Shown: positions 27,067 through 53,428 of the stretch, in pieces
Layout of the letters: every line of letters begins with the position of its first letter
How positions within the stretch are numbered: the stretch's first letter is position 1
NCBI GenBank assembly: GCA_965644265.1
Contig: OZ286472.1
Coordinates: 11,284,001-11,348,000 of the forward strand
Direction: 5' to 3'
Length of the DNA stretch: 64,000 nucleotides
Source: Glycera tridactyla
Lineage: Eukaryota
Translations under genes and position numbers: made by a program
The notes under the pieces: model-generated
Seen by the model: the letters and a program-made list of their open reading frames with translations, nothing else
Told to the model about the DNA's origin: nothing
The model's database searches: none

Positions 27067-29398
27067 TATTAGGAACATCAACCAGTCATTTCAGCCTGAT
27101 CAGATAGAAACTTCTTTTTGTTTTGATATGATGGCGACTGTTCATGCCATTTCCAATGAAAATGTCTGATTCTTCATGATTATGATTTTCAGGATGGCGT
27201 CTCTAAGCACCTGCTGGCAGGGCATTCATGCGCATGCCGTGCGAACATGATGGGGGTGTTTGAAGGGCACTATACAGTAAAGGGTTAAAGATGATCAACT
27301 GCTGCAGAATAGTCAAAATAAGTGCTTGACTATCCAAATATCGGAGGATAGCGGATGCTTTATTTTGACATGTGTCAACAGAATCACAACAGAACTATGA
27401 CATTTGAGATTACAGTCAAATAAGTTCAGACATCAAATCTTGGTCAGTATTTGTCCATGACAGCTAGAAGATGACGAGATGCCAGATGAGGACGATGAAT
27501 CAAATTGCAATGGATTGGTAGGGCATGTCGTGATGGCATAGAGCGCAGGCTACTGGCCATCCCATCAGCTGACAAGATTGGCTAGCCGGCCACGTGCCAA
27601 AGGGCTGACCACTGTGCATCATGACAAATTGTCTCCTGGTACAAACAATCGCATTAAAGGCCGGTGTTATGCTGCTGGGAAACAAAACCCCATCATCTGG
27701 TCATCACCTCCAGTCCTGACCTTGAACATTGCACTCTGACCTCAGAGTATGGCAATCTGCGATAATTCTATACATTTCTATCATTGCATAGAAGATTGCC
27801 AGCACTACTGCCACTCTGTCATTGCAATCTGAAACTAGCTAACTGAGTCAGTTTATTGACTGTCAGAAAACTACACATTGTGAGAAGCTACAATTCTCTG
27901 AGTGAATCAAAGTGATTGTAGCACTTCATATGACCTAAAATACTTTTAAACTTTAGTTATATCGACCTCTGGCTCCCACCATGAAAGCCGTATACATATT
28001 AGTAATATAGTTGAGAGTCAATAAACTTTCCACGATGACGGTCCGATTGCAAACGACCACATATTATCCTGGTATTGGACCAAGGGTCACATTTGCCCAT
28101 CTTTCACTGAGCGAAAAACGAGCATCCTCCTTCCACAAGATGAGGCACGGACCAAATAACCCACTCCTGTGATAACGTCACAGGCAATGTCTCTCTTGTC
28201 ATACAGAGAAAAATCAATAAAACATGCACACCAACACACAAACCACATTCACACACACACATACCACAAACAGTTTCAAAGTCACCCCATAATTTTGGTA
28301 TAGATAAGGAGCAGTGACTCACCCTGATTGCTGGTTGCAGCTATGAAGGGTTTTTCCAACCCCACATCATTCAATGCCAGTTGGAATTTGATGAGTAATT
28401 TTCAATATAATTATTAGAATGTAACATCCATAATTTGGAAGAGCTTAGCAATGCTAGTTTCTGCAAATCTCATCAAAATTGATAAAATTATTGAAGTCAT
28501 CCTTGAACAAATGGTAAAAGTTGTTCTGAATTTTTGAATTAGAAGTGCCCAAAACCCTGATCATGTGTTTCACCGATGACATGCCCAACTCTTGTCTTGG
28601 TTGTTCCTGGTCGTGATGGCATCATCTCTGTGATGGACTCATCTTGTAACGTTATCTTTCATCATGAAAAGTTATCAAACTTGTTTTGTCAATAAACAAA
28701 CTGTCCACTGGAGGATAGTAACATTCTTCCTTCATGATTTTCAACCAAGAACAACCTCTGTATATCAACGATCTGTTCACAAAGACCACTATGTTTTACT
28801 GAAGACTAACCAAGTGTAACTCAACATCATTATGCCGATTGCTTGCCCAAATCCTTGTCCAAAACCGAGTCCAAAATGTATTGCAAATTCCCGGATTTTC
28901 AACATGGGCATCTGAGCAGCAGTGAAAAAGAAAAATGTGTGAGTTTGGATCACAAGCTGGTCCATCATGTACATGCNNNNNNNNNNNNNNNNNNNNNNNN
29001 NNNNNNNNNNNNNNNNNNNNNNNNNNNNNNNNNNNNNNNNNNNNNNNNNNNNNNNNNNNNNNNNNNNNNNNNNNNNNNNNNNNNNNNNNNNNNNNNNNNN
29101 NNNNNNNNNNNNNNNNNNNNNNNNNNNNNNNNGAATATCCTTCTACCCCGTCACAATATCATATATAAACTGGGATGAAAATCCCAAGAGTGGATTCCCA
29201 GAATGAGGGAGCATACACATATATGTATGTGAGTATATGAGTATCTTAACAAGAGGATTGAAGGGTCAAGGCAAATGAGGTCCATAAGAGCGCCATCTTT
29301 CAGATGCTATTCTTCGATTTGTGTCAGTTAGCCCATCGCAACTACATCGGGGATTCGATAATCCAAGTGAGAACACCGCGTGAAAGACAAGTGCATGC

Positions 29399-29417
29399 CA
29401 GCACCCTCTAGTGGCCA
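29399..29417 (-). promoter_or_regulatory. Candidate CTCF site (duplicated at 37958-37976)
   Basis: Minus strand TGGCCACTAGAGGGTGCTG versus consensus TGGCCACCAGGGGGCGCTA gives 15/19, with differences mostly at tolerated positions. Motif match only. Confidence 0.4.
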
Positions 29418-30297
29418 TACATTTCCCATCATGCACCTGAGCTCACCAGATTTGATTAGCTAACTTCTTTGTCATGCAGGATGGAAGAAGTAAAGCTGTT
29501 GATGAGAGAAGAAAAATGCAGCTTCTTCCTGCATATCTTCACGCAGTCTTCATCGCTTTGATCTCTCCGGCTTTAACCCAAAATTATCCAACATGAAAGG
29601 TCCGATTATGAAATCAGATATAAATGACAGGATAGATTCAACAAAAGCATTAAATTATCCTAGATAGACGCCAGTTTGGAAGTAAAATTTGACTCTGAAT
29701 ATATATGAAAACAGAATGCAAATTCAATAAGAAATGAAACAACTTTTTTCCAAAAAAGTGATAGTAGCCAATTTGCATGCAAACTATACATACAGAAATA
29801 ATTCACTCAGACACTATGTCTGCTCTACTGATTGTAACTTGATCATATATGATAAACATCACCTATATTCTTGCTGTAAGTCAGCATATGTCCACTGACT
29901 GAAAATTTCAACTGAAAATTCAATTGATGTGGAATCGAAGCAGATGCTCCTGGTTGCTACGGTTTCTCTATCACCATGGAAACTACCTGGGTTCACTCTG
30001 GTACAGACATACTTAACTTCTTGTGAGATCATCCATAAGGGATCAGCTTTTTATTCCTTAACCAATGTTCAGAATCTCAGTGGGATCAGTAATCGCATAA
30101 TTGCGTGTGAAGTGAAATCCCTCATCCATCCCTCTTCCCAAGCTTCCAGAATAACTCAGATATTTCGAATCTTTCTTATATGTTCTTCATCCTTTATATG
30201 ATTTTAAAACTCCATCTACACCAAGGTTAATCTGTCTGAATATGAATGTATTCCACACTTTTGGGGCGAATTCTTGATAATATGGATACAGCTGAGC

Positions 30298-30444
30298 CTG
30301 CTTGAAACCACCTGCAAACAATTGCGAAGTTCTCACAAAGGCAACCATGAGCAGTCACTCTGATAGTTTTTCAACAGTGAACAACTTTTGTTCAGCAGCA
30401 ACCTGTCTACAAAGACCACTCTTGATACGACTCAGGTTCAGCTG
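30298..30444. mobile_element. MITE family A-like remnant (duplicated at ~38857-39003)
   Basis: AACCTGTCTACAAAGACCAC and terminal CAGGTTCAGCTG-TA. Confidence 0.5.
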
Positions 30445-30800
30445 TAACTGAAAATGGGTATAATGAAATGTGCATGGTGATGAGTACATATCTCCCTCTC
30501 CTGATTAAGACAACCAATGAGTGAATATGTGAAGTGGGGTACAAGAGATCTAGAAGCCACCCAGGACTTCCGCTTAATTCATGGTGACTTGACAATGTCA
30601 AGTTGGCCCAAGCTTCAAGAGGCTGACCTTCCCGACTATATGCCCTAATGACACAAACTCATATTTTTCACACAAAAATTCACATGGAAACGTAATTGAG
30701 ATGAGAAGATACATAATTGATACTTCAGCCTGAGGATAGGTGATGGTGGATTTTCATATAGGTATTAAAAACACAGGTGGCTTCAATACAACAAGATTTC

Positions 30801-33800
30801 CTGTATATAATACCTGTGTTATCAGAAATGTTGAAATGATTTGTATTGTTTGTATTTGAAATTTGTCACCTTAGAGGTTTCTTTGGAATAGCGGGATCCT
30901 GTATACAACCGGAGAGATACTAAAAAGCTTGTTACATGCAATATCTGGCGTCCCACCGGAAACAGCATGCCCGCTTGATATGATTATGAATGGTGTCCTG
31001 TATTTATCATACTAACATAAATTTCATCCAAACCAACATTAGGTCCGATGACATGGATGTGATAACATATGAACATTGAGACTGACATGGGTACTATGAA
31101 GGAACATTTGAGAATATCGTATTGCTTGTCCCTTGCAACCCATCTTTTCTTTATTACTCCGAATTGTTTGGAGATTAACTTGCAATCGCTAAACCAGTCC
31201 ATATTGATAACTGATCAATTTTGTACATTGCTTCTAACCTAGTTAGCCTAAATTTATGTCATCATCTCATCATCACCCATCATTTAATGGTCTCGCAAAC
31301 CCAGTCCCAGGATGGACAAATCTGAGCTTTGATAACACACCCACTTCACGCGTTGTGCCGTTAGCAGTAAAAGGGGCCCCATTTTAACAGAAGAAACAAT
31401 ACAACAAGTCAACTGCTCTTCAGATTTAAATAGACTGAATGGAGTGAGCATGGCCTACCAAAATATACGCAGTGTAACACGCAAAATAGATGATATCAAG
31501 ATACTATTACAAAATAGCCAATTGGACATCCTATGCATGGGAGAAACATTCCTCAACAATAGCATCCCAGATTCAGAGTTATTAATTCCTGGGTATCATT
31601 TCACTCGCTCTGATAGAAGCAACGGCTCCTGTGCTAGAGGTGGGGGTGGTATCCTAATATACCATAAAGAGGATCGTCTTGTAGAATATCTCTCAAACCT
31701 CACTGTGTGTAATGCGGATATAGAGTGCGTTTGGATGAAATTACATTTGACACACACGAAACCAACATATATTGCGAGTGTCTATCGCCCTCCCAAAGGA
31801 AACACTAGAAATGCTTATGAGATACTTGAAAATAAGATTTTGGATTTAAAAAGTATTGGAAACTGTGACATAGTAGTACTAGGAGATCTGAATCAAGATG
31901 TCATTAAAAGAGGACCTAGTAAACAAGCAGTTAACGATTTTTGTGCAGTGTGTAATCTGTCCCAGCTAGTGAATGTTCCTACAAGGGTTACAGCAAGTAC
32001 ATCGACATGTATAGATCATATATATGTATCAGAACCAAACTTGTATAGGATGGCCGGGGCAGTTGACCTTGGACTCTCCGACCATTGTCTTGTATTTTCC
32101 ACTCGAAAAAAGGCCCGTATGTCCAAAAAAAAGAAATATATATACCTCAGGAATTTCAAAGCTGTAGACTACGAAAATCTTTCTGCAAAGTTATATGAAT
32201 TGATTGAAAGAGAGGGCTTTGATAATGAAACTATTGACAATCCTGATACTTTCACGGAAAAGTTCTTCAAGAGTGCTGGTGAGATCGTAAATAATGCAAT
32301 TCCGCTAAAAAGATACTGTGTACAGGAGGGATGCCCCGACTGGGTCACCGGAGATTTCCTTGAGATGGTGAGGGAGCGTGAGAACGCGAGTCACTTATAC
32401 AAGCTAAACCCCTCTCCAGTAAATCTAGAAGAGAAAAATAGACTTTTAAAATTATGCAAAAAGACCAAGATAACACTGCAGAAGGAATACCTTGAAAATC
32501 AACTAATATTAAATAAAGACAATAATCGTAAGACATGGAAAATTATTAGAGATTTTTGGAAAAATAATAGAGGCAACACACATATCAATAAAATTGAGAA
32601 CAAAACCGAACCAGTAGAGATTGCCAATGAACTAAACAGTTTCTTTGGTAGTATTGGTACAAACCTATCCAATCTCATACATGACATCTCTGGTGACCCG
32701 CTCGAGACATTCCCCTTTTCCTACCATGAATGTTTCTCGTTTGAAACAGTTACAATCAATGATGTCCAGGATGTAATATCGACAATATCAGTCAACAAAG
32801 CTGGAAGGGAAGATGGTATACCAGCTAGGGTCTTAGTAGAATGCAGAGCGGTATTGGCCCCCATCTTGAAAAACATTTTTAATTCATGTATATCAACAGG
32901 TGTCTTCCCTGGATGGTGGAAGACAGCGTCTATAGTTCCTTTGTTCAAAGATGGTGACCGCTGCAAAGCAAACAACTATCGGCCTATTAGCCTGTTATCA
33001 CCTTCTAGTAAAATACTAGAACGTCTACTACATCAGCAACTGTATGATTATGTAGAGCGCATGAGTCTACTGTGTCGGGAGCAGTCAGGATTCAGGAGGG
33101 GTCGTTCCACTGGCACATGTCTCTTAGAATACCTTGATAATATCTACCTGGGTATCGAGCGTGGAAGTGCCACTGGGACGATCTTCCTGGATCTAAAGAA
33201 GGCTTTCGACACGGTGGACCATGCGCTCCTGGTACGTAAATTGCAACTCTATGGCTTAAATGTATTATCTCTGTCGTTAATAGGTACCTACCTATCGAAC
33301 CGGTCATGTCAAACTAGAATTGGAACCGTATTATCTGATATCGAACGGGTCTCTTGTGGTGTTCCTCAGGGGTCTATACTTGGACCCTTGTTGTTTAGTT
33401 TGTACATAAATGACCTTCCATATTACCTGAGGGACACCACACTGGATATCGCAGAAACATCAATACGAGATCAAGACAGTGAATCTACACTACAAAGATC
33501 ACTGACTTTAGGAAATGAATCACCATTCCATACATCGCCTCCTAAGAAAATGCTCATATTTAGTAGACCATCTGACCTTAACTGCCAGTTATATGCAGAT
33601 GACATAGCGATAAGTATCACCACAGCTGACCCAATCTGCATGGAATTATCTCTCAACCTTATGATGAAGAAGGTGGCTTTATGGATGAAGCGCAACAAAT
33701 TGTCACTTAACTTATCGAAAACAAAACTCATGGTACTTGGTTTGCCATCCAGACTCCAGCTGTTCGACAAAGTCAAAGTTGATATAGACATGCATGAGCT

Positions 33801-34820
33801 TGAACGTGTTGAAAAAATGAGATACTTAGGGATAGTAGTTGACCCTCGTTTAACTTTCAAATACCATGTCCAGCACGTGAAAGCAAGCACTCTGAGTAAA
33901 ACTGGAGTACTGGGTCGCCTCTGTCCGATTTTGAATCAAGAACTTTCCTTGAAACTGTATAAAACCTTAATACTCCCCATATTCGATTATGGGGATGTAG
34001 TTTTCAACTGTTTAGCTCAACGAGACGCCTTCTCATTGCAGAAGGTACAAAATATTGCCATGAGATATATTTCAAAAAAGTCCAAGAGGTTTAGTATTGA
34101 CAAATTACATAATCAACTTGGCCTACAACCCTTGGCATCTAGAAGATCGGAACACGAGTTGATTCATGTTAATAATAGCTTAAATGGTCATTTCTCTTGT
34201 GAACCAATCTGTGAACTTGCTACCAGTACCCACCAACATGAAACACGCTCAAAAGGAAGACCATATTTAAAAATCGAAAGAATGCACTATTCCTTATGTG
34301 AGCGTAATTTCAGATATAGGGCAGCAAAGCGTTGGAATACTCTCGTAACCAACCGAGCTGATGCAGAGATCATGGAACACAAATCATTTAAGGCATTTAT
34401 GGAAGAACTTCGTTATTTGGAATGAAAAGGTCGATCCGTGATCAATGGGAGATGTTATTTAATTAGTACATATACTAAATTAAGTAGTTCAGTTTATTCT
34501 TGCCAACTGTCCATTCCGAATATTATGTATTGTGTATGTTAAGACCATATCGAGATCATTACGTATAGCAAGCATTAGACATTTTTATAATGCCAGTCGA
34601 AAAAATTTGTCTGGAAGACCAACCGTTTCATCTCACGTACCATCAATTCATTCATACTCTCATAGTCATTTATCACCACACTCATAATCATCTCATAATC
34701 ATATTTGATTGTATGTTAAACGTTTCGTCATCCTGAAAATGTGCATTGCATCATCTTGTATGTGCTTGTCTAATTGTCATGACAAATGTGAATAAAAGTT
34801 TCAAAAAAAAAAAAAAAAAA
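30801..34820 (+). mobile_element. Non-LTR retrotransposon LINE-A (CR1/L2 group, Crack/Daphne-like), apparently intact and very recent
   Basis: Boundaries are set by comparison with the empty site in the duplicate copy (39359/39363). About 640 nt precede the ORF, which is 993 codons of APE-RT. The 3'UTR has AATAAA at 34791 followed by an A-run at 34803-34820. No TSD. Clade assignment is from motifs only. Confidence 0.95.
31444..34425 (+). CDS. ORF2-type polyprotein: apurinic-like endonuclease + reverse transcriptase + C-terminal domain
   Basis: APE motifs YQNIRS, GETFL, VYRPP, GDLN, CIDHIY, SDH. RT motifs NYRPISLL, QSGFRRGRST, FLDLKKAFDTVDH, GVPQGSILGPLLF, YADD, NKLSLNLSKTK, YLG. No stops. 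The track start is GTG 31444; the first ATG is 31450, and the frame is open back to TGA-TAA at 31330-31335. Confidence 0.95.
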   Translation: MSMAYQNIRSVTRKIDDIKILLQNSQLDILCMGETFLNNSIPDSELLIPGYHFTRSDRSNGSCARGGGGILIYHKEDRLVEYLSNLTVCNADIECVWMKLHLTHTKPTYIASVYRPPKGNTRNAYEILENKILDLKSIGNCDIVVLGDLNQDVIKRGPSKQAVNDFCAVCNLSQLVNVPTRVTASTSTCIDHIYVSEPNLYRMAGAVDLGLSDHCLVFSTRKKARMSKKKKYIYLRNFKAVDYENLSAKLYELIEREGFDNETIDNPDTFTEKFFKSAGEIVNNAIPLKRYCVQEGCPDWVTGDFLEMVRERENASHLYKLNPSPVNLEEKNRLLKLCKKTKITLQKEYLENQLILNKDNNRKTWKIIRDFWKNNRGNTHINKIENKTEPVEIANELNSFFGSIGTNLSNLIHDISGDPLETFPFSYHECFSFETVTINDVQDVISTISVNKAGREDGIPARVLVECRAVLAPILKNIFNSCISTGVFPGWWKTASIVPLFKDGDRCKANNYRPISLLSPSSKILERLLHQQLYDYVERMSLLCREQSGFRRGRSTGTCLLEYLDNIYLGIERGSATGTIFLDLKKAFDTVDHALLVRKLQLYGLNVLSLSLIGTYLSNRSCQTRIGTVLSDIERVSCGVPQGSILGPLLFSLYINDLPYYLRDTTLDIAETSIRDQDSESTLQRSLTLGNESPFHTSPPKKMLIFSRPSDLNCQLYADDIAISITTADPICMELSLNLMMKKVALWMKRNKLSLNLSKTKLMVLGLPSRLQLFDKVKVDIDMHELERVEKMRYLGIVVDPRLTFKYHVQHVKASTLSKTGVLGRLCPILNQELSLKLYKTLILPIFDYGDVVFNCLAQRDAFSLQKVQNIAMRYISKKSKRFSIDKLHNQLGLQPLASRRSEHELIHVNNSLNGHFSCEPICELATSTHQHETRSKGRPYLKIERMHYSLCERNFRYRAAKRWNTLVTNRADAEIMEHKSFKAFMEELRYLE

Positions 34821-35429
34821 ACAAGGAGGACCTCGGTCACGTACGATCGCTATCCAATTTGAAGCATTCAGGAGTGAATCCATCAGGATTTTGACCCCAC
34901 TTAAATGATGATCCCAGTTTTAGAGCTCTCATGATCATTTACACTTGCTGAAATGGCAGCTGATGACCTTGTAATCAACAAAGGTTTAGAGTGAAGCCGC
35001 AAGATTTCATTCAAGCTTCATCCCCTCTATACAACCAAATATTCTCCATGATTATCCAATAGCCTGACATAACTTAATGATGAGTAACTCAAGTAAGAAA
35101 ATACTTATTTGGGAATACATTGGTTCGTCACACATGTTGTAATGGATGGCAGCAAGATCTCCCACCCTGTAAATGTGCCACTCATGACTGTTAAGCAGGC
35201 TTGCTATGACTGAATTTCTTCATGTTTGTTTATATCAAGAATACCTGATCTGATTTGAAACTTTATCACACGAGAAATGATGACAGTAGTCATATAAAAT
35301 GCTCATTTGGGCAAACAAGAGAACATCAAACAGAGAACAGGCCTGACAGTATTTCATAACTTGATGGTTCATGACTCGATTGAAGCATACTTCCACACGA
35401 CTTGCAGAAGATACTTTCACAGAAATATA

Positions 35430-35575
35430 GAGTCGAACCTCCTCTGAAGACCACCTCTCTATGAAGACCACCTCTCTATAAAGACCACCCTGAGCTGGGA
35501 CTGTGGTAGTATTGTCAATAGTAAATAACCTCTCTATAAAGACCACCTCCCTTAAAAGCCACTTTTCAATGAGAC
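35430..35575. mobile_element. MITE family A, one end missing (duplicated at ~39972-40117)
   Basis: TA-GAGTCGAACCT then AAGACCACCTCTCTAT repeats, aligning to the reverse complement of 60197-60374. Confidence 0.8.
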
Positions 35576-35592
35576 CAGAATATGTCCAATAT

Positions 35593-36075
35593 CAGGGCTT
35601 CATCTCGTCACTGCAGGAATGAAAGTCATCTTGCGGCAAAAAAACACACTGCAGAGATAAGAGTCACCCTGCGGGGGGGAACCCCCCCCTCCCCCCCCCC
35701 CCCCCCGACAAATTCATTATGATGGACTTGAGAATGGGCAGACACAGCTGCATCATGCTTGAGATAACAATGGCTGACTGTCCACCATGATTTTTAGAGA
35801 AAAAAAAAACCCAGACAGAAGACTTTGTCATCATTGTGTGCAAGAAATGTTGTGATGATGAATAGCACTTCTTGGCAGTATCACTTTCTAGTGCCTTAAC
35901 CAATGCTGTGAAAAATGCCATCATCTCATCATAATGCACTCATCCAAGGCATCTCAGATGAAAGCAACACACTCTTCCTTTTTTTCAAATATATGTAGAC
36001 CTTATTTTAGCAAGAACTCATCAAAGGTGAAACAGTTCACTGAATTAGTCGCAGTGGGAAGAGAATGTAGCCTTG
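35593..36075. mobile_element. Possible CAGGGCT-ended TIR element (duplicated at ~40135-40611)
   Basis: CAGGGCTTCATCTCGTCACTGC versus reverse-complemented CAAGGCTACATTCTCTTCCCACTGC, with an internal G/C homopolymer block. No TSD. Confidence 0.4.
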
Positions 36076-36846
36076 ATTTCCACGATTCCATTATCAAATA
36101 CCACAGAGTGAACAAATCCAACCACTCTCAAATCAGTTTTAGCTATATCAATGCTGTCAGGCCACACTCTCCAAAACCATGAGACATTCCAATACTGTGG
36201 GTTATTGAACACAATATCCAACAGGTCTATATTTCCCTGATTCAGCAGTATCTGTGGTATAATAGAGTGGGTACCATTGAATGTTAGCATCATATGCAGC
36301 ACTGGAAGGATTACAGAAATATTGAGAATTCACATGTGTACTCTTACATGTACAGGTCTGGCTACCTGCAATGAGTCCCCATGACAAGAGACCACCTATT
36401 TTGGAAGAGTGCTTTTTGGACATCCGTTTTCTATTCGACATTATGGTCGGTTGTCTGGTGAGAAACACTCAGGATATACTGAGATGCCTATAAACAATAA
36501 AGAAATGGATTCATTCAAAGATTTGGAGTTTCATATTGACTATGGGGTACTAAAATATCCCATACTGGAGGGCCATGATTCTTACCCCATCAATCATGGG
36601 ATGAACAATTGAATTTTGTGTTTGAATGATATTTGATGCTTGAATAAGAGCATATCAGTTTCATGAGCTGGGATATAGAGTGGGCTCAGAGCGTGCTGCG
36701 TTATTCGTTACCACGGTTATTGGTTAGGCTCAATCATTCAATGAATGCACGGTCATGATCATGTCATTTGTGTGCTGTTCATAGTAGTGGCCTCATCTAC
36801 ACTGGTGCTGAGTGGGGGTAGTGTGTGTGTGTTTGTTTGTGTGTGT

Positions 36847-39800
36847 GATAAGGAGCAGTGACTCACCCTGATTGCTGGTTGCAGCTATGAAGGGTTTTTC
36901 CAACCCCACATCATTCAATGCCAGTTGGAATTTGATGAGTAATTTTCAATATAATTATTAGAATGTAACATCCATAGTTTGGAAGAGCTTAGCAATGCTA
37001 GTTTCTGCAAATCTCATCAAAATTGATAAAATTATTGAAGTCATCCTTGAACAAATGGTAAAAGTTGTTCTGAATTTTTAAATTAGAAGTGCCCAAAACC
37101 CTGATCATGTGTTTCACCGATGACACGCCCAACTCTTGTCTTGGTTGTTCCTGGTCGTGATGGCATCATCTCTGTGATGGACTCATCTTGTAACGTTATC
37201 TTTCATCATGAAAAGTTATCAAACTTGTTTTGTCAATAAACAAACTGTCCACTGGAGGATAGTAACATTCTTCCTTCATGATTTTCAACCAAGAACAACC
37301 TCTGTATATCAACGATCTGTTCACAAAGACCACTATGTTTTACTGAAGACTAACCAAGTGTAACTCAACATCATTATGCCGATTGCTTGCCCAAATCCTT
37401 GTCCAAAACCGAGTCCAAAATGTATTGCAAATTCCCGGATTTTCAACATGGGCATCTGAGCAGCAGTGAAAAAGAAAAATGTGTGAGTTTGGATCACAAG
37501 CTGGTCCATCATGTACATGCAGATAGNNNNNNNNNNNNNNNNNNNNNNNNNNNNNNNNNNNNNNNNNNNNNNNNNNNNNNNNNNNNNNNNNNNNNNNNNN
37601 NNNNNNNNNNNNNNNNNNNNNNNNNNNNNNNNNNNNNNNNNNNNNNNNNNNNNNNNNNNNNNNNNNNNNNNNNNCTGCCGCACATTGAAAAGAATATCCT
37701 TCTACCCCGTCACAATATCATATATAAACTGGGATGAAAATCCCAAGAGTGGATTCCCAGAATGAGGGAGCATACACATATATGTATGTGAGTATATGAG
37801 TATCTTAACAAGAGGATTGAAGGGTCAAGGCAAATGAGGTCCATAAGAGCGCCATCTTTCAGATGCTATTCTTCGATTTGTGTCAGTTAGCCCATCGCAA
37901 CTACATCGGGGATTCAATAATCCAAGCGAGAACACCGCGTGAAAGACAAGTGCATGCCAGCACCCTCTAGTGGCCATACATTTCCCATCATGCACCTGAG
38001 CTCACCAGATTTGATTAGCTAACTTCTTTGTCATGCAGGATGGAAGAAGTAAAGCTCTTGATGAGAGAAGAAAAATGCAGCTTCTTCCTGCATATCTTCA
38101 CGCAGTCTTCATCGCTTTGATCTCTCCTGCTTTAACCCAAAATTATCCAACATGAAAGGTTCGATTATGAAATCAGATATAAATGACAGGATAGATTCAA
38201 CAAAAGCATTAAATTATCCTAGATAGACGCCAGTTTGGAAGTAAAATTTGACTCTGAATATATACGAAAACAGAATGCAAATTCAATAAGAAATGAAACA
38301 ACTTTTTTCCAAAAAAGTGATAGTAGCCAATTTGCATGCAAACTATACATACAGAAATAATTCACTCAGACACTATGTCTGCTCTACTGATTGTAACTTG
38401 ATCATATATGATAAACATCACCTATATTCTTGCTGTAAGTCAGCATATGTCCACTGACTGAAAATTTCAACTGAAAATTCAATTGATGTGGAATCGAAGC
38501 AGATGCTCCTGGTTGCTACGGTTTCTCTATCACCATGGAAACTACCTGGGTTCACTCTGGTACAGACATACTTAACTTCTTGTGAGATCATCCATAAGGG
38601 ATCAGCTTTTTATTCCTTAACCAATGTTCAGAATCTCAGTGGGATCAGTAATCGCATAATTGCGTGTGAAGTGAAATCCCTCATCCATCCCTCTTCCCAA
38701 GCTTCCAGAATAACTCAGATATTTCGAATCTTTCTCATATGTTCTTCATCCTTTATATGATTTTAAAACTCCATCTACACCAAGGTTAATCTGTCTGAAT
38801 ATGAATGTATTCCACACTTTTGGGGCGAATTCTTGATAATATGGATACAGCTGAGCCTGCTTGAAACCACCTGCAAACAATTGCGAAGTTCTCACAAAGG
38901 CAACCATGAGCAGTCACTCTGATAGTTTTTCAACAGTGAACAACTTTTGTTCAGCAGCAACCTGTCTACAAAGACCACTCTTGATACGACTCAGGTTCAG
39001 CTGTAACTGAAAATGGGTATAATGAAATGTGCATGGTGATGAGTACATATCTCCCTCTCCTGATTAAGACAACCAATGAGTGAATATGTGAAGTGGGGTA
39101 CAAGAGATCTAGAAGCCACCCAGGACTTCCGCTTAATTCATGGTGACTTGACAATGTCAAGTTGGCCCAAGCTTCAAGAGGCTGACCTTCCCGACTATAT
39201 GCCCTAATGACACAAACTCATATTTTTCACACAAAAATTCACATGGAAACGTAATTGAGATGAGAAGATACATAATTGATACTTCAGCCTGAGGATAGGT
39301 GATGGTGGATTTTCATATAGGTATTAAAAACACAGGTGGCTTCAATACAACAAGATTTCATAACAAGGAGGACCTTGGTCACGTACGATCTCTATCCAAT
39401 TTGAAGCATTCAGGAGTGAATCCATCAGGATTTTGACCCCACTTAAATGATGATCCCAGTTTTAGAGCTCTCATGATCATTTACACTTGCTGAAATGGCA
39501 GCTGATGACCTTGTAATCAACAAAGGTTTAGAGTGAAGCCGCAAGATTTCATTCAAGCTTCATCCCCTCTATACAACCAAATATTCTCCGAGATTATCCA
39601 ATAGCCTGACATAACTTGATGATGAGTAACTCAAGTAAGAAAATACTTATTTGGGAATACATTGGTTCGTCACACATGTTGTAATGGATGGCAGCAAGAT
39701 CTCCCACCCTGTAAATGTGCCACTCATGACTGTTAAGCAGGCTTGCTATGACTGAATTTCTTCATGTTTGTTTATATCAAGAATACCTGATCTGATTTGA

Positions 39801-41356
39801 AACTTTATCACACGAGAAATGATGACAGTAGTCATATAAAATGCTCATTTGGGCAAACAAGAGAACATCAAACAGAGAACAGGCCTGACAGTATTTCATA
39901 ACTTGATGGTTCATGACTCGATTGAAGCATACTTCCACACGACTTGCAGAAGATACTTTCACAGAAATATAGAGTCGAACCTCCTCTGAAGACCACCTCT
40001 CTATGAAGACCACCTCTCTATAAAGACCACCCTGAGCTGGGACTGTGGTAGTATTGTCAATAGTAAATAACCTCTCTATAAAGACCACCTCCCTTAAAAG
40101 CCACTTTTCAATGAGACCAGAATATGTCCAATATCAGGGCTTCATCTCGTCACTGCAGGAATGAAAGTCATCTTGCGGCAAAAAAACACACTGCAGAGAT
40201 AAGAGTCACCCTGCGGGGGGGAACCCCCCCCCCCCCCCCCCCGACAAATTCATTATGATGGACTTGAGAATGGGCAGACACAGCTGCATCATGCTTGAGA
40301 TAACAATGGCTGACTGTCCACCATGATTTTTAGAGAAAAAAAAAACCCAGACAGAAGACTTTGTCATCATTGTGTGCAAGAAATGTTGTGATGATGAATA
40401 GCACTTCTTGGCAGTATCACTTTCTAGTGCCTTAACCAATGCTGTGAAAAATGCCATCATCTCATCATAATGCACTCATCCAAGGCATCTCAGATGAAAG
40501 CAACACACTCTTCCTTTTTTTCAAATATATGTAGACCTTATTTTAGCAAGAACTCATCAAAGGTGAAACAGTTCACTGAATTAGTCGCAGTGGGAAGAGA
40601 ATGTAGCCTTGATTTCCACAATTCCATTATCAAATACGACAGAGTGAACAAATCCAACCACTCTCAAATCAGTTTTAGCTATATCAATGCTGTCAGGCCA
40701 CACTCTCCAAAACCATGAGACATTCCAATACTGTGGGTTATTGAACACAATATCCAACAGGTCTATATTTCCCTGATTCAGCAGTATCTGTGGTATAATA
40801 GAGTGGGTACCATTGAATGTTAGCATCATATGCAGCACTGGAAGGATTACAGAAATATTGAGAATTCACATGTGTACTCTTACATGTACAGGTCTGGCTA
40901 CCTGCAATGAGTCCCCATGACAAGAGACCACCTATTTTGGAAGAGTGCTTTTTGGACATCCGTTTTCTATTCGACATTATGGTCGGTTATCTGGTGAGAA
41001 ACACTCAGGATATACTGAGATGCCTATAAACAATAAAGAAATGGATTCATTCAAAGATTTGGAGTTTCATATTGACTATGGGGTACTAAAATATCCCATA
41101 CTGGAGGGCCATGATTCTTACCCCATCAATCATGGGATGAACAATTGAATTTTGTGTTTGAATGATATTTGATGCTTGAATAAGAGCATATCAGTTTCAT
41201 GAGCTGGGGTATAGAGTGGGCTCAGAGCGTGCTGCGTTATTCGTTACCACGGTTATTGGTTAGGCTCAATCATTCAATGAATGCACGGTCATGATCATGT
41301 CATTTGTGTGCTGTTCATAGTAGTGGCCTCATCTACACTGGTGCTGAGTGGGGGTG

Positions 41357-50496: not shown

Positions 50497-53428
50497 TCAT
50501 GTCCTCTCTTTGATCCATTCCATGATATGCCCTTTGAAAGTAGATTTAGTCAGATATAGCTTCTGCCTGATTTCAGGAGGAATTTTGATCCAGACTTTTG
50601 GGCCTTGGAAGGAAAACGCCTTTTGACCAAGATTTGTCCTAGTTCTTGGAAGAACCAATAACGAATCAGTTGCACCCCTGGTTTCATGCATGTGAATATC
50701 TCTGGTTTGGTCAAGCAAATCAGATAGATATAGTGGGGATACCCCCTTGAGACAACTTTGGACCTGTAGTATCAGATGCATTTCCCTTCTCTCGTCTAGC
50801 CGGAGTAGATCCAGTCTCTGGTGCATGACATCTGTGCCCGCCCATCTGTTTTCTAGAAGAATAGTTCTGCAAGCTTTGTTCTGGATCAGTTGCAAAGAAT
50901 ATGACTCCTTTGACCCAATGGATGCATATACTGTGTCACAATAGTCAAGTAGCGGGATCGTCAGGCTATTATACAGTTGTAGTGCAGTGGATATAGACAA
51001 GAATTGCCTGACCCTGGACAATAGATACAGACGTTGGCTGGCTTTGGAGATGACACAGTCTATATGGCAGGCAAAAGTCAAACTAGGGTCGAGAGTAACT
51101 CCTAGGTATTTAAATTCATTAGTAGGACTGATCAATGAGCTGTCCATTGTTAGCTCCAGTGGAGATGAGTTGGATAGATTATGTTTACTGCCAAATAGCA
51201 TGGATTTGGTTTTCCGAACATTGAGGAAAAGCTTGTTTGTTTTGAGCCACCTCTCTATCTCCACTAGATCCGCCTGTAGCTTGCGTGTTATTTCGTCTTT
51301 CTCTCTGCCTGAGCAATACAAAGCTGTGTCATCTGCGTAGAGAATACATTTTGAATACAAAAGAACTGAGTCAATGTCATTGATGTAAATAATGAAGAGC
51401 AGAGGGCCGAGCGTAGATCCCTGGGGAACCCCACAGGTGACCTGGAGTTGGTTGCTAAGAGATCCATTGATGCTTGTTCTCTGAGTTCTACCAGTCAGGT
51501 AAGATTCAAACCAGGACAGTTCTATGCCTTCGATACCATATTTCTTCAGTTTGGATATAAGTCTGAAATGGTCAACGGTATCGAAGGCTTTTTTGAAGTC
51601 TAAGAATACCATAGCTGTAAGATTACCTCTATCCATCTGAGTGAAGATTTCATTGGTAACGTAGAGAAGAGAGCTTTCCGTTGAGTGGGCCTTGCGGAAA
51701 CCAGATTGTGCTTTGTTAAACAAGGCATGTAGTGTGAAAAAGTCATACACTTGACTATGAACAACTTTTTCAATCAGTTTAGAAGTGAAAGGAAGAATCG
51801 ATATCGGCCTATAATTTGAGGGATCATCTCGCTGCCCATCTTTGTAGATTGGGGTCACCTGTGAGGTTTTCCATGCATTGGGAAAAGTGCCTGTATTCAT
51901 ACTTCTGGTGAGAAATTCAAGCATTAGATGAGAGATTACTTGGTGAGAATCACGTATATGTCTAGAATAGATACCGGGGATCCCAGTCGGTTTGCCTTGG
52001 GGAAGGGCAGATAGGAAATCAGAGACAAATTGAAGTTCAGGTAATTTGAATCTAAATTGCTCAGGTGGGGACTGAATTTCTGGTTCACTGGCAAGTCCTT
52101 CCCCAGTTATGTCCTTACAAAGGTTTGGACCAACACTGGTGATGTAACTGTTGTACGAATTTGCCATTCCCATTGGGTCTGTGTAACCAGCTAGTTCCGA
52201 AATATGAACAGAATTTTTCCGCATAGACAATAATTCTCTAAAGACTTTCCATGTCTTCTTCGAATCACCCTTGGATTCTTCAATTTTGTGTTTGTAGTAG
52301 GACTTCTTCAATGACAGCGCCATTGCATTTTCCTCATTTCTGATCCTATTGGACGCAGCAATATGATCTGGGATCCCTGACCTACGAGCAATTTTTCGAG
52401 CATCAGTGAAGGCATGAATAAGTGCAATATATTCTTCTGTTAACCAAGGAACATTTTCTAGCCTGATGTTCATAACTTTGTAGGGTGATACCTCATCACA
52501 AACATGCAGATAGATGGTCAGGAAATTGTCAAAGTCATTGGAAATGTCGTCGGTGAACTGAAAGTTGTCAAATTCAGCATTAAGCCTTGAGCAGAAGACT
52601 TCTTTTGAGTATGATCTGAAACATCTAGCGTTGATTTTTGTTTTTTCTTTCGAGATTTTGCAATGCTTTCGCGAGGTGAGGACCATGTCATGGTCACTAA
52701 GTCCTGTATCCAAGACCAGAGATCTGTTATACATCTCTACCCTATTTACCATTATTATGTCAAGTAGTGTAGTAGCTGTAAGTGAAAGTCTCGTTGGTCT
52801 GTCGATCAATTGAGTGAGCGTTTGCGTTTTCAAAGAGCTTTAGACTCTTGCGTGGGGCCAGATTCTTCAAGTAGTCAATGTTGCAATCTCCTAGTGATAC
52901 AATGTCTTTAGTTGGGATATTGTCCAGAAAGTTTATCTTCTGACTCAGTTCATATAGTCCTTCGTCAACGTCAGCGTCTGGGGGTCGGTATATATTGAAT
53001 ACAAATGTTTTCCTTGCTCTTTCAAGCTCCAGAGACAATGCTAAACTTTCAATATTCTTGGTGCATGTTGATAGATCTGGGCAGTGCATCACCTTCAAAT
53101 TTGACTTGCAATAGCACATGAGACCACCTCCTCTCTTTGGTGGCTGGAGATTTCTATCTTGCCTATGGGTCAAATACCCATTTATTTGCAGCTCAAAATC
53201 CCTAATTTTTGGTGTTAGCCAGGTCTCAGAGAGCGTGAGAGTGTGGATATTGAGATCCTTGATCACATGTTTCAGATTATCAATCTTGGGTTTGAGACTG
53301 CACATATTCTGATGGGCTAGCTTAAGGCCAGGAAGATTCTTAACGTTGTTTAAGGTGGAGTATAATGAATTCTCAGGTGCAACTGGGCCAGGATTTCTCT
53401 CAATATCACCACATAGTAATAACATCAT
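50497..53428 (-). pseudogene. LINE-B ORF2 (2A-APE-RT) split by one frameshift at ~52827-52830
   Basis: The 222-aa frame has HQNMCSL, LSETWL, IYRPP, GDCN. The 778-aa frame has LDIIMVN, SDH, NYRPISILP, QSGFRKAHST, FLDFKKAFDTVDH, GVPQGSTLGPLLF, YADD. Removing one A from sense TTTGAAAACG joins KLFE to TQTLTQLIDRPTR. Confidence 0.92.
53384..53428 (-). other. 2A / StopGo ribosome-skipping peptide MMLLLCGDIERNPG/P
   Basis: Exact match to the D(V/I)ExNPGP consensus with hydrophobic leader, directly N-terminal to the APE domain. This is the known position of 2A in APE-type non-LTR elements. Confidence 0.85.

What the first reader, a model, noticed from the sequence alone, without database searches (positions are those of the whole stretch)
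33415..33591. Intact young LINE RT with a ~47-aa in-frame insertion immediately before the catalytic YADD
Seen: LINE-A has 59 residues between YIND and YADD (LPYYLRDTTLDIAETSIRDQDSESTLQRSLTLGNESPFHTSPPKKMLIFSRPSDLNCQL), against 12 in LINE-B in this same window. The insert is stop-free and S/T/P-rich. Its only GT..AG options (85 or 88 nt) are not multiples of 3, so it is not a clean intron. Every other catalytic motif is intact and the copy is very recent. Known: motif 4-5 spacing is short and conserved in CR1/L2 RTs. Inference: an active lineage whose RT palm tolerates or uses an extra loop, possibly a new interaction surface.
Basis: partly seen in the sequence, partly recalled or inferred. 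Interest (0 to 1): 0.75.

Follow-up and report, generated by a model that had tools for sequence, protein, structure and literature searches.

The report
Hypervariable disordered loop in LINE RT
A jumping gene (LINE) of this marine invertebrate carries a floppy 20-60-residue extra loop just before the catalytic centre of its reverse transcriptase. The loop is shared, in ever-changing form, by a whole large and recently active clade of LINEs in this genome. It evolves almost freely, so it looks tolerated rather than used.

Summary
The 993-codon APE+RT frame (window 31444-34425) has 59 residues between YIND and YADD, against 12 in LINE-B.

The insert is not private. Three other LINE-A copies carry it (98.6, 92.8 and 84.6% identical). 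Every sister subfamily sampled in this genome has its own 33-66-residue spacer. All form one clade (100/100 support).

Outside this genome, all 262 spacers that could be measured in the closest proteins are 10-14 residues.

The flanks of the spacer are conserved. The core varies in length and sequence.

- dN/dS is 0.4-1.4 in the core against 0.07-0.15 in the flanking RT. This holds in three subfamilies.
- AlphaFold2 gives pLDDT below 50 for the core in both a 59- and a 35-residue form.
- The core is rich in S, T, D and N and poor in K, R and aromatic residues.
- There is no sign of an intron, an RNA structure or a tandem repeat.

My reading: a clade-wide, intrinsically disordered, nearly neutral surface loop between the motif B helix and the motif C strand. 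It is tolerated by an active RT. An "interaction surface" is not supported.

The window copy is very young, because an empty site lies nearby. It has a private YADDT-to-YADDI change and a 1-nt gap that cuts off the upstream start codon.

The CR1/L2 assignment is not established: the element has a poly(A) tail and no ORF1.

The parts
30796..34822 (+). LINE-A, full element (4.03 kb, single ORF)
   Evidence: The same 5' and 3' ends are seen in three other genomic copies. An empty site in a neighbouring duplicate confirms the limits.
31256..31387 (+). Upstream ATG and short frame. This is the N-terminal extension of the ORF in the other copies. Here a 1-nt gap near 31352 cuts it off.
31450..34425 (+). 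APE-RT open reading frame, 991 codons from the ATG, plus the stop codon
   Evidence: AF2 model: pLDDT 86, pTM 0.77. The best fold match is human LINE-1 ORF2p.
31462..32085 (+). APE-type endonuclease domain
   Evidence: PF03372, E 5.6e-09
32968..33837 (+). Reverse transcriptase domain
   Evidence: PF00078, E 7.4e-32
33364..33414 (+). Motif B (PQGSILGP) and its helix, up to YIND
   Evidence: Invariant columns in alignments A1 and A2. Aligns to human ORF2p up to residue 680.
33415..33441 (+). Conserved N-terminal flank of the spacer (LPYYLRDTT), modelled as a helix continuation
   Evidence: Conserved in all subfamilies. pLDDT is 93 for this block.
33442..33564 (+). Hypervariable loop core, 41 codons
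   Evidence: dN/dS 0.47-1.44. Residues of window 33466-33570 have pLDDT below 50. Only 4 genomic copies hold this version.
33565..33591 (+). Conserved C-terminal flank of the spacer (RPSDLNCQL), leading into the motif C strand
33592..33606 (+). Catalytic YADD, followed by the private T-to-I change at codon 33604-33606
34791..34821 (+). AATAAA signal (34791-34796) and A19 tail (34803-34821)
39355..39364 (+). Empty (unoccupied) target site in a 99.1-99.5% identical tandem duplicate of the flanks

Best explanation
The 'insert' is LINE-A's version of a clade-wide hypervariable loop. In one ancestor of a large LINE clade of this genome, the connection between the motif B (RT4) helix and the motif C (RT5, YADD) beta-strand grew from the usual ~12 residues to more than 30. 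Since then the two ends of the connection have stayed conserved: LPxxLRxxT on the helix side, and an alternating hydrophobic stretch plus CQL on the strand side. The middle drifts by substitutions and in-frame indels. The drift is almost free of sequence constraint, but the middle keeps a polar, acidic composition poor in basic and aromatic residues, so it stays a soluble, unstructured surface loop. By the standard right-hand RT topology (inference), the loop leaves the palm at the end of the motif C strand farthest from the catalytic aspartates. That would explain why the polymerase tolerates it. Shown here: the distribution of the loop, its single clade, the relaxed selection, the predicted disorder, the biased composition and the recent activity. 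Inferred: the loop's position on the outer face of the palm, and that it has no sequence-specific function.
For: The same loop is present in 4 copies. There are 24 distinct long-spacer sequences of 33-66 residues in 12 or more subfamilies, and at least 8 of these have full open frames of 1034-1077 codons. All long-spacer RTs form one clade with 100/100 support, apart from 12-residue outgroups. All 262 measurable spacers outside this genome are 10-14 residues (117 proteins; 145 motif pairs in 136 of 147 proteins). HMMER alignments of nearly all 150 best hits among 1.84 billion proteins are split in two, the first part ending at the start of the loop. NG86 dN/dS in the loop core is 0.47-1.44 against 0.07-0.14 in the flanks for LINE-A (Fisher p = 2e-7). 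The same pattern holds in the 35- and 42-residue families. AF2 gives pLDDT below 50 for the core in both the 59- and the 35-residue forms, with the rest of the RT above 85. Compared with expectation from the loop's own base composition, observed/expected ratios are D 2.5, S 1.7, T 1.6, K 0.26, Y 0.19 and W 0. The empty site in a 99.1-99.5% identical duplicate shows a very recent insertion. A1-private changes are 7 synonymous to 2 non-synonymous, so the source lineage was under selection.
Against: dN/dS near 1 over 16-41 codons cannot separate neutrality from a mix of constrained and positively selected sites. The biased composition shows some selection on the loop. A comparable insertion, the avian R2 C-terminal insertion, was once taken for a disordered loop and later proved functionally important (PMC11601368). 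AF2 disorder rests on shallow alignments of the loop, 10-24 rows. The conserved C-flank was not modelled confidently, so part of the extra length may be structured. I had no model coordinates, so the loop's position relative to the other domains is inferred. LINE-A could in principle be mobilised in trans by sister families.
Confidence: 0.75

Rival explanations
1. The loop is a functional surface, for example a host-factor docking or phospho-regulated segment, or a target of a host restriction factor. On this view it evolves fast under diversifying selection and contributes to the success of this clade.
For: Several pairwise dN/dS values exceed 1 (1.02-1.44). Length changes rapidly while the frame is always kept. 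The composition is non-random, rich in S, T and D and poor in K and R. All sampled members of a large clade retain a loop of 33 residues or more. The R2 CTI is a precedent.
Against: No value is significantly above 1. No short motif is shared between subfamilies' cores. The core is predicted disordered. Retention of length may only reflect the lack of pressure to delete.
Confidence: 0.17
2. The extra length is partly a structured extension of the palm, with only the tip disordered. The extension would be a longer motif B helix plus an extra beta-strand forming a hairpin with the motif C strand, as human L1 ORF2p has in the same place with ~28 residues.
For: The flanks are conserved, with an alternating hydrophobic pattern before CQLYADD. 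AF2 continues the helix into the spacer. ORF2p aligns up to the same helix.
Against: AF2 gives low confidence (38-61) for the C-flank and no extra strand in either model. This reading refines the best explanation rather than contradicting it.
Confidence: 0.3
3. The segment is not translated as part of the RT. It would be an intron, or an RNA cis-element embedded in the ORF.
Against: Retrotransposed copies derive from processed RNA, yet all 4 copies and all subfamilies keep the segment in frame. No GT..AG span is a multiple of 3. The RNA fold z-score is -0.39. Nucleotide divergence is higher in the loop than in the flanks, 79% against 87% identity. No RNA runs were listed, so splicing could not be tested directly.
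Confidence: 0.02
4. It is a private insertion, a pseudogene artefact or an assembly error of this one copy.
For: None.
Against: It is found on four chromosome-scale contigs, and in variant form in hundreds of loci.
Confidence: 0.01

Closest known systems
APE-type LINE ORF2 proteins of the CR1/Jockey-like group (nearest database proteins, e.g. the Exaiptasia 'X-element' RT, P0001)
   Same: The APE + RT + C-terminal domain order is the same, and all RT motifs are present. Identity over the RT and C-terminal part is 32-47%.
   Different: All 262 measurable spacers in these proteins are 10-14 residues between the (Y/F)IND-type helix end and (Y/F)ADD. This clade has 33-66 measured, possibly up to ~75. 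LINE-A has a poly(A) tail and no ORF1.
Human LINE-1 ORF2p (PDB 8uw3, 9k6i, 9hdr, 8c8j)
   Same: It is the best structural match for the whole 991-residue model (Foldseek E 1e-30). The motif B helix aligns up to ORF2p residue 680. From my own knowledge of the ORF2p sequence, L1 also has a longer B-to-C connection, about 28 residues.
   Different: Identity is 15-16%. The insertions described in ORF2p are motifs 0, 2a, 3a and 6a, and none lies between motifs 4 and 5 (PMC10830420). The L1 connection is ordered and conserved, not hypervariable.
C-terminal insertion (CTI) of A-clade vertebrate R2 proteins
   Same: It is a lineage-specific expansion of a loop in a LINE protein that was first taken for a disordered loop (PMC11601368).
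   Different: It sits at a different position. It is anchored by a conserved EWE motif and its truncation lowers insertion efficiency. The loop core here shows no conserved anchor and has dN/dS near 1.
Insertions named in non-LTR and group II intron RTs (RT0, 2a, 3a, 6a/7a) and the telomerase IFD
   Same: The principle is the same: extra segments between conserved RT blocks.
   Different: Those are conserved, structured and functionally assigned. This one lies between blocks 4 and 5, is variable in length and is predicted disordered. I found no description of one at this position in the four full-text searches.

Membership tests
APE-type non-LTR retrotransposon (LINE) | N-terminal apurinic-type endonuclease domain | tested here: met
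   PF03372 and PF14529 hits. L1 EN structures are matched.
APE-type non-LTR retrotransposon (LINE) | RT domain with motif B (PQG) and catalytic (Y/F)xDD | tested here: met
   PF00078, E 7e-32. Invariant columns.
APE-type non-LTR retrotransposon (LINE) | Defined 3' end with a tail, variable genomic copies, and insertion without LTRs | tested here: met
   AATAAA plus A19. Four copies share the same ends. Filled and empty sites are both present.
APE-type non-LTR retrotransposon (LINE) | Target-site duplication | tested here: not met
   The empty site shows a 10-nt stretch replaced by the element, with 5-nt (ATTTC) and 2-3-nt microhomology and no duplication. LINE insertions without a TSD do occur, so this does not exclude membership.
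   The 3' end is AATAAA followed by A19.
   The 650-nt leader holds only short frames, and the element's 5' end is fixed by three other copies.
   No reference LINE library is on hand. The nearest proteins carry only automatic names.
Intrinsically disordered, hypervariable surface loop | Low predicted order, relaxed sequence constraint, length polymorphism, polar composition | tested here: met
   pLDDT below 50. dN/dS 0.4-1.4. Spacer 33-66 residues. Composition.

The most novel reading that the evidence does not exclude
The B-to-C loop is a fast-evolving functional module that the clade acquired once and keeps. It could be, for example, a phospho-regulated or host-factor/restriction-factor interface on the back of the RT palm. 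Its diversification among subfamilies would then reflect an arms race or subfamily-specific partner choice. It would also mark a naturally permissive site for inserting modules into LINE RTs.
Probability: 0.15. Interest if true: 0.7.

Novelty: new variant of a known kind. Interest (0 to 1): 0.42.

Why it matters
RT palms are among the most constrained protein cores. The stretch between motif B and the catalytic YxDD strand is short and fixed in every one of the 262 measurable spacers of the nearest relatives outside this genome. Here a large, recently active LINE clade carries 20-60 extra, freely evolving residues at that spot. This shows that the position is structurally permissive in a working target-primed RT. 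That is useful for RT and LINE engineering, because it marks a natural site for tags or fused modules. It also gives a clean marker (a synapomorphy) for tracing this LINE clade. If the loop turned out to be functional, it would be an undescribed 'motif 4a' element. As it stands it is a well-documented curiosity, not a new mechanism.

Tried and rejected
- Intron or spliced segment: rejected.
- RNA structure in the loop-coding stretch: z = -0.39.
- Tandem-repeat origin: none found.
- Captured host or other genomic sequence: the loop DNA matches only the four LINE-A copies.
- RNA-seq test of expression or splicing: no run was listed.
Those lengths are therefore estimates from match length only.
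- Close relatives outside this genome: none above 47% identity and none with a long spacer, in either the word-index search or the exhaustive HMMER search.
- Literature: four full-text searches found no description of an insertion between RT motifs 4/B and 5/C in LINEs. This library lacks Repbase Reports and many subscription papers, so absence is weak evidence.
- Model coordinates are not exposed, so the loop's 3D neighbours could not be measured.
- No consensus of the copies was built.

Full report
**1. The observation**

Window 31444-34425 (+) is one stop-free frame of 993 codons, or 991 from the ATG at 31450. Pfam finds an APE-type endonuclease (PF03372, residues 7-214) and an RT (PF00078, E 7e-32, residues 509-798).

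Exactly 59 residues lie between YIND and YADD, encoded by 33415-33591. LINE-B of the same window (50500-52833, minus strand; 31% identical over 800 residues) has 12. S, T and P make up 16 of the 46 extra residues. The single usable GT (33479) gives GT..AG spans of 68, 85, 88 and 110 nt, none divisible by 3.

**2. The element**

Three other genomic copies align to the window from 30796 to about 34822. Their identities are 98.6, 92.8 and 84.6%. LINE-A is therefore a 4.03-kb element with these parts:
- a ~650-nt leader without an ORF1;
- a single APE-RT ORF;
- a 3' UTR ending in AATAAA and A19.

A 99.1-99.5% identical tandem duplicate of both flanks lies at 37859-40836 and is empty. Ten bases (39355-39364) stand where the element sits. 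There are 5-nt and 2-3-nt microhomologies to the element's ends and no target-site duplication. The lead for this came from note s1-333430. The insertion is therefore younger than that duplication.

Of nine A1-private codon changes, polarised with the 93% copy, seven are synonymous. So most of them arose in a selected, active source lineage rather than after insertion.

Two blemishes are private to the window copy.
- The residue after YADD is I. All other copies and all outside relatives have T.
- A 1-nt gap near 31352 puts the upstream ATG (31256) out of frame. In the other three copies that ATG reads in frame into the ORF and adds 66 residues. Sister subfamilies also have frames of 1034-1077 codons.

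**3. The insert is not private**

The loop-coding DNA (33436-33575) is found four times in the 2.04-Gb genome, in exactly the four LINE-A copies.

Searches with the surrounding DNA and with the protein find many more distant LINEs. Their RTs align on both sides of the loop but differ in between. Reading 24 distinct, stop-free sequences gives spacers of 33, 35, 36, 41, 42, 44, 47, 49, 51, 55, 56, 57, 59, 60 and 66 residues. Match lengths suggest forms up to about 75 residues.

The first ~9 residues (LPxxLRxxT) and the last ~10-14 are conserved. The last part is an alternating hydrophobic stretch followed by CQL, just before YADD. The middle cannot be aligned between subfamilies. At least eight subfamilies with different loops have complete open frames.

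In a maximum-likelihood tree built without the loop columns, all 24 long-spacer RTs form one clade. It has 100/100 support and sits on a long branch, apart from seven outside relatives with 12-residue spacers. This points to a single origin followed by diversification.

**4. Outside this genome**

- The word-index search over 5.8 billion proteins gave 120 best hits at 28-46% identity. In the 117 with recognisable motifs, the distance from PQG to (Y/F)ADD is 28-31 residues, meaning a spacer of 11-14.
- The exhaustive HMMER search of 1.84 billion representatives gave no hit above 47% identity. Nearly every alignment is split in two, with the first part ending at query residues 172-183, the start of the loop. 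All 145 motif pairs measured in 136 of the 147 new proteins have spacers of 10-14.

The long spacer is specific to this clade as far as these libraries see.

**5. Selection**

Nei-Gojobori estimates between the four LINE-A copies give dN/dS of 0.07-0.14 for the RT on either side. The 41-codon core (33442-33564) gives 0.47-1.44. The excess of non-synonymous changes in the core is significant (odds ratio 10.8, Fisher p = 2e-7).

The same contrast appears in two other subfamilies: core 0.4-1.4 against flanks 0.07-0.20. In the 35-residue family the deeper pairs give p between 1e-4 and 0.03. In the 42-residue family p goes down to 1e-7.

The RT is thus under strong purifying selection, while the loop core is close to neutral at the sequence level. 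No estimate is significantly above 1.

**6. Structure**

AF2 on the whole ORF (53-row alignment) gives pLDDT 86 and pTM 0.77. The only long stretch below 50 is residues 673-707, inside the loop (window 33466-33570). The conserved N-flank continues the motif B helix with high confidence, and the strand carrying YADD is confident again from residue 711.

The RT domain of a 35-residue-spacer member (64 rows) shows the same picture. Residues 217-234 fall below 50 while the rest is at 86.

Foldseek ranks full-length human L1 ORF2p structures first (E 1e-30). By sequence, the alignment to ORF2p runs up to residue 680, the helix after motif B, and stops at the loop.

By the common right-hand RT topology, the start of the motif C strand is the end farthest from the catalytic aspartates. 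The loop should therefore project from the outer face of the palm. This is inference, because I had no coordinates.

**7. Composition**

Across 12 subfamily representatives (322 loop residues), I compared observed counts with the expectation from the loop's own base composition.

| Residue | Observed / expected |
|---|---|
| D | 2.5 |
| M | 2.4 |
| S | 1.7 |
| T | 1.6 |
| N | 1.5 |
| R | 0.58 |
| L | 0.55 |
| C | 0.34 |
| K | 0.26 |
| Y | 0.19 |
| W | 0 |

So there is selection on the kind of residues, typical of disordered linkers, but not on the sequence itself.

**8. Rejected alternatives**

- Intron: retrotransposed copies keep the segment, always in frame, and there is no in-frame GT..AG span.
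- RNA element: fold z = -0.39, and the loop diverges faster than its flanks.
- Tandem repeat: none found.
- Captured sequence: no other genomic match.
- Direct RNA evidence could not be had.

**9. What is known**

The ORF2p structure paper lists insertions 0, 2a, 3a and 6a, and none between motifs 4 and 5 (PMC10830420). The nearest conceptual precedent is the C-terminal insertion of avian R2. It was first taken for a disordered loop and later shown to matter for insertion efficiency (PMC11601368). That is a caution against declaring this loop useless. Four literature searches found no description of this feature, but Repbase could not be consulted.

The CR1/L2 label is not established. Two typical features, a microsatellite tail and an ORF1, are absent, and the RT phylogeny against references is not testable here.

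**10. Verdict**

This is a real, clade-wide feature that I could not find described. Most likely it is a tolerated, intrinsically disordered and nearly neutral loop. The 'interaction surface' idea remains possible, at about 15%, but unsupported.

Noticed in passing
window 29300-30795 + 34823-36300 versus 37859-40836: A tandem segmental duplication, 99.1-99.5% identical. One copy holds LINE-A and the other is empty. The junction shows microhomology (ATTTC at the 5' end, AAC at the 3' end) and no target-site duplication. Ten bases of the empty site are replaced.
   Followed up: partly
window 31256-31450: The other three LINE-A copies start the ORF at an upstream ATG, giving a 66-residue N-terminal extension that begins MSSSHHH. 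In the window copy a 1-nt gap near 31352 ends that frame after 43 codons. The leader also holds several short upstream frames.
   Followed up: partly
window 33604-33606: A private T-to-I change directly after YADD. The T is invariant in all sister copies, all subfamilies and all outside relatives examined.
   Followed up: yes
window 50497-53428 (minus strand): LINE-B: the RT frame (778 codons) and the APE frame (222 codons) are separate ORFs that overlap by about 74 nt. This could be a frameshift mutation or a recoding site. Not examined.
   Followed up: no
window 33471-33890 (minus strand): A 139-codon antisense ORF runs across the loop and YADD region of LINE-A. It is probably a chance ORF.
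   Followed up: no
L008 (G000:C1:86157164-86160690): Two different LINE RTs lie in one 3.5-kb locus, one with a 49-residue spacer and one with a 12-residue spacer. This is likely a nested or adjacent insertion.
   Followed up: no
P0081: A 964-residue APE+RT LINE protein is labelled in NCBI as a hypothetical protein of a gammaproteobacterial MAG. It is probably eukaryotic contamination of that bin.
   Followed up: no
window 30796-34822: LINE-A has a single-ORF architecture with no ORF1, a 650-nt leader and a poly(A) tail, although its nearest RT relatives are CR1/Jockey-like. The abundant 35-residue-spacer family appears far more numerous than LINE-A, which has 4 copies.
   Followed up: partly
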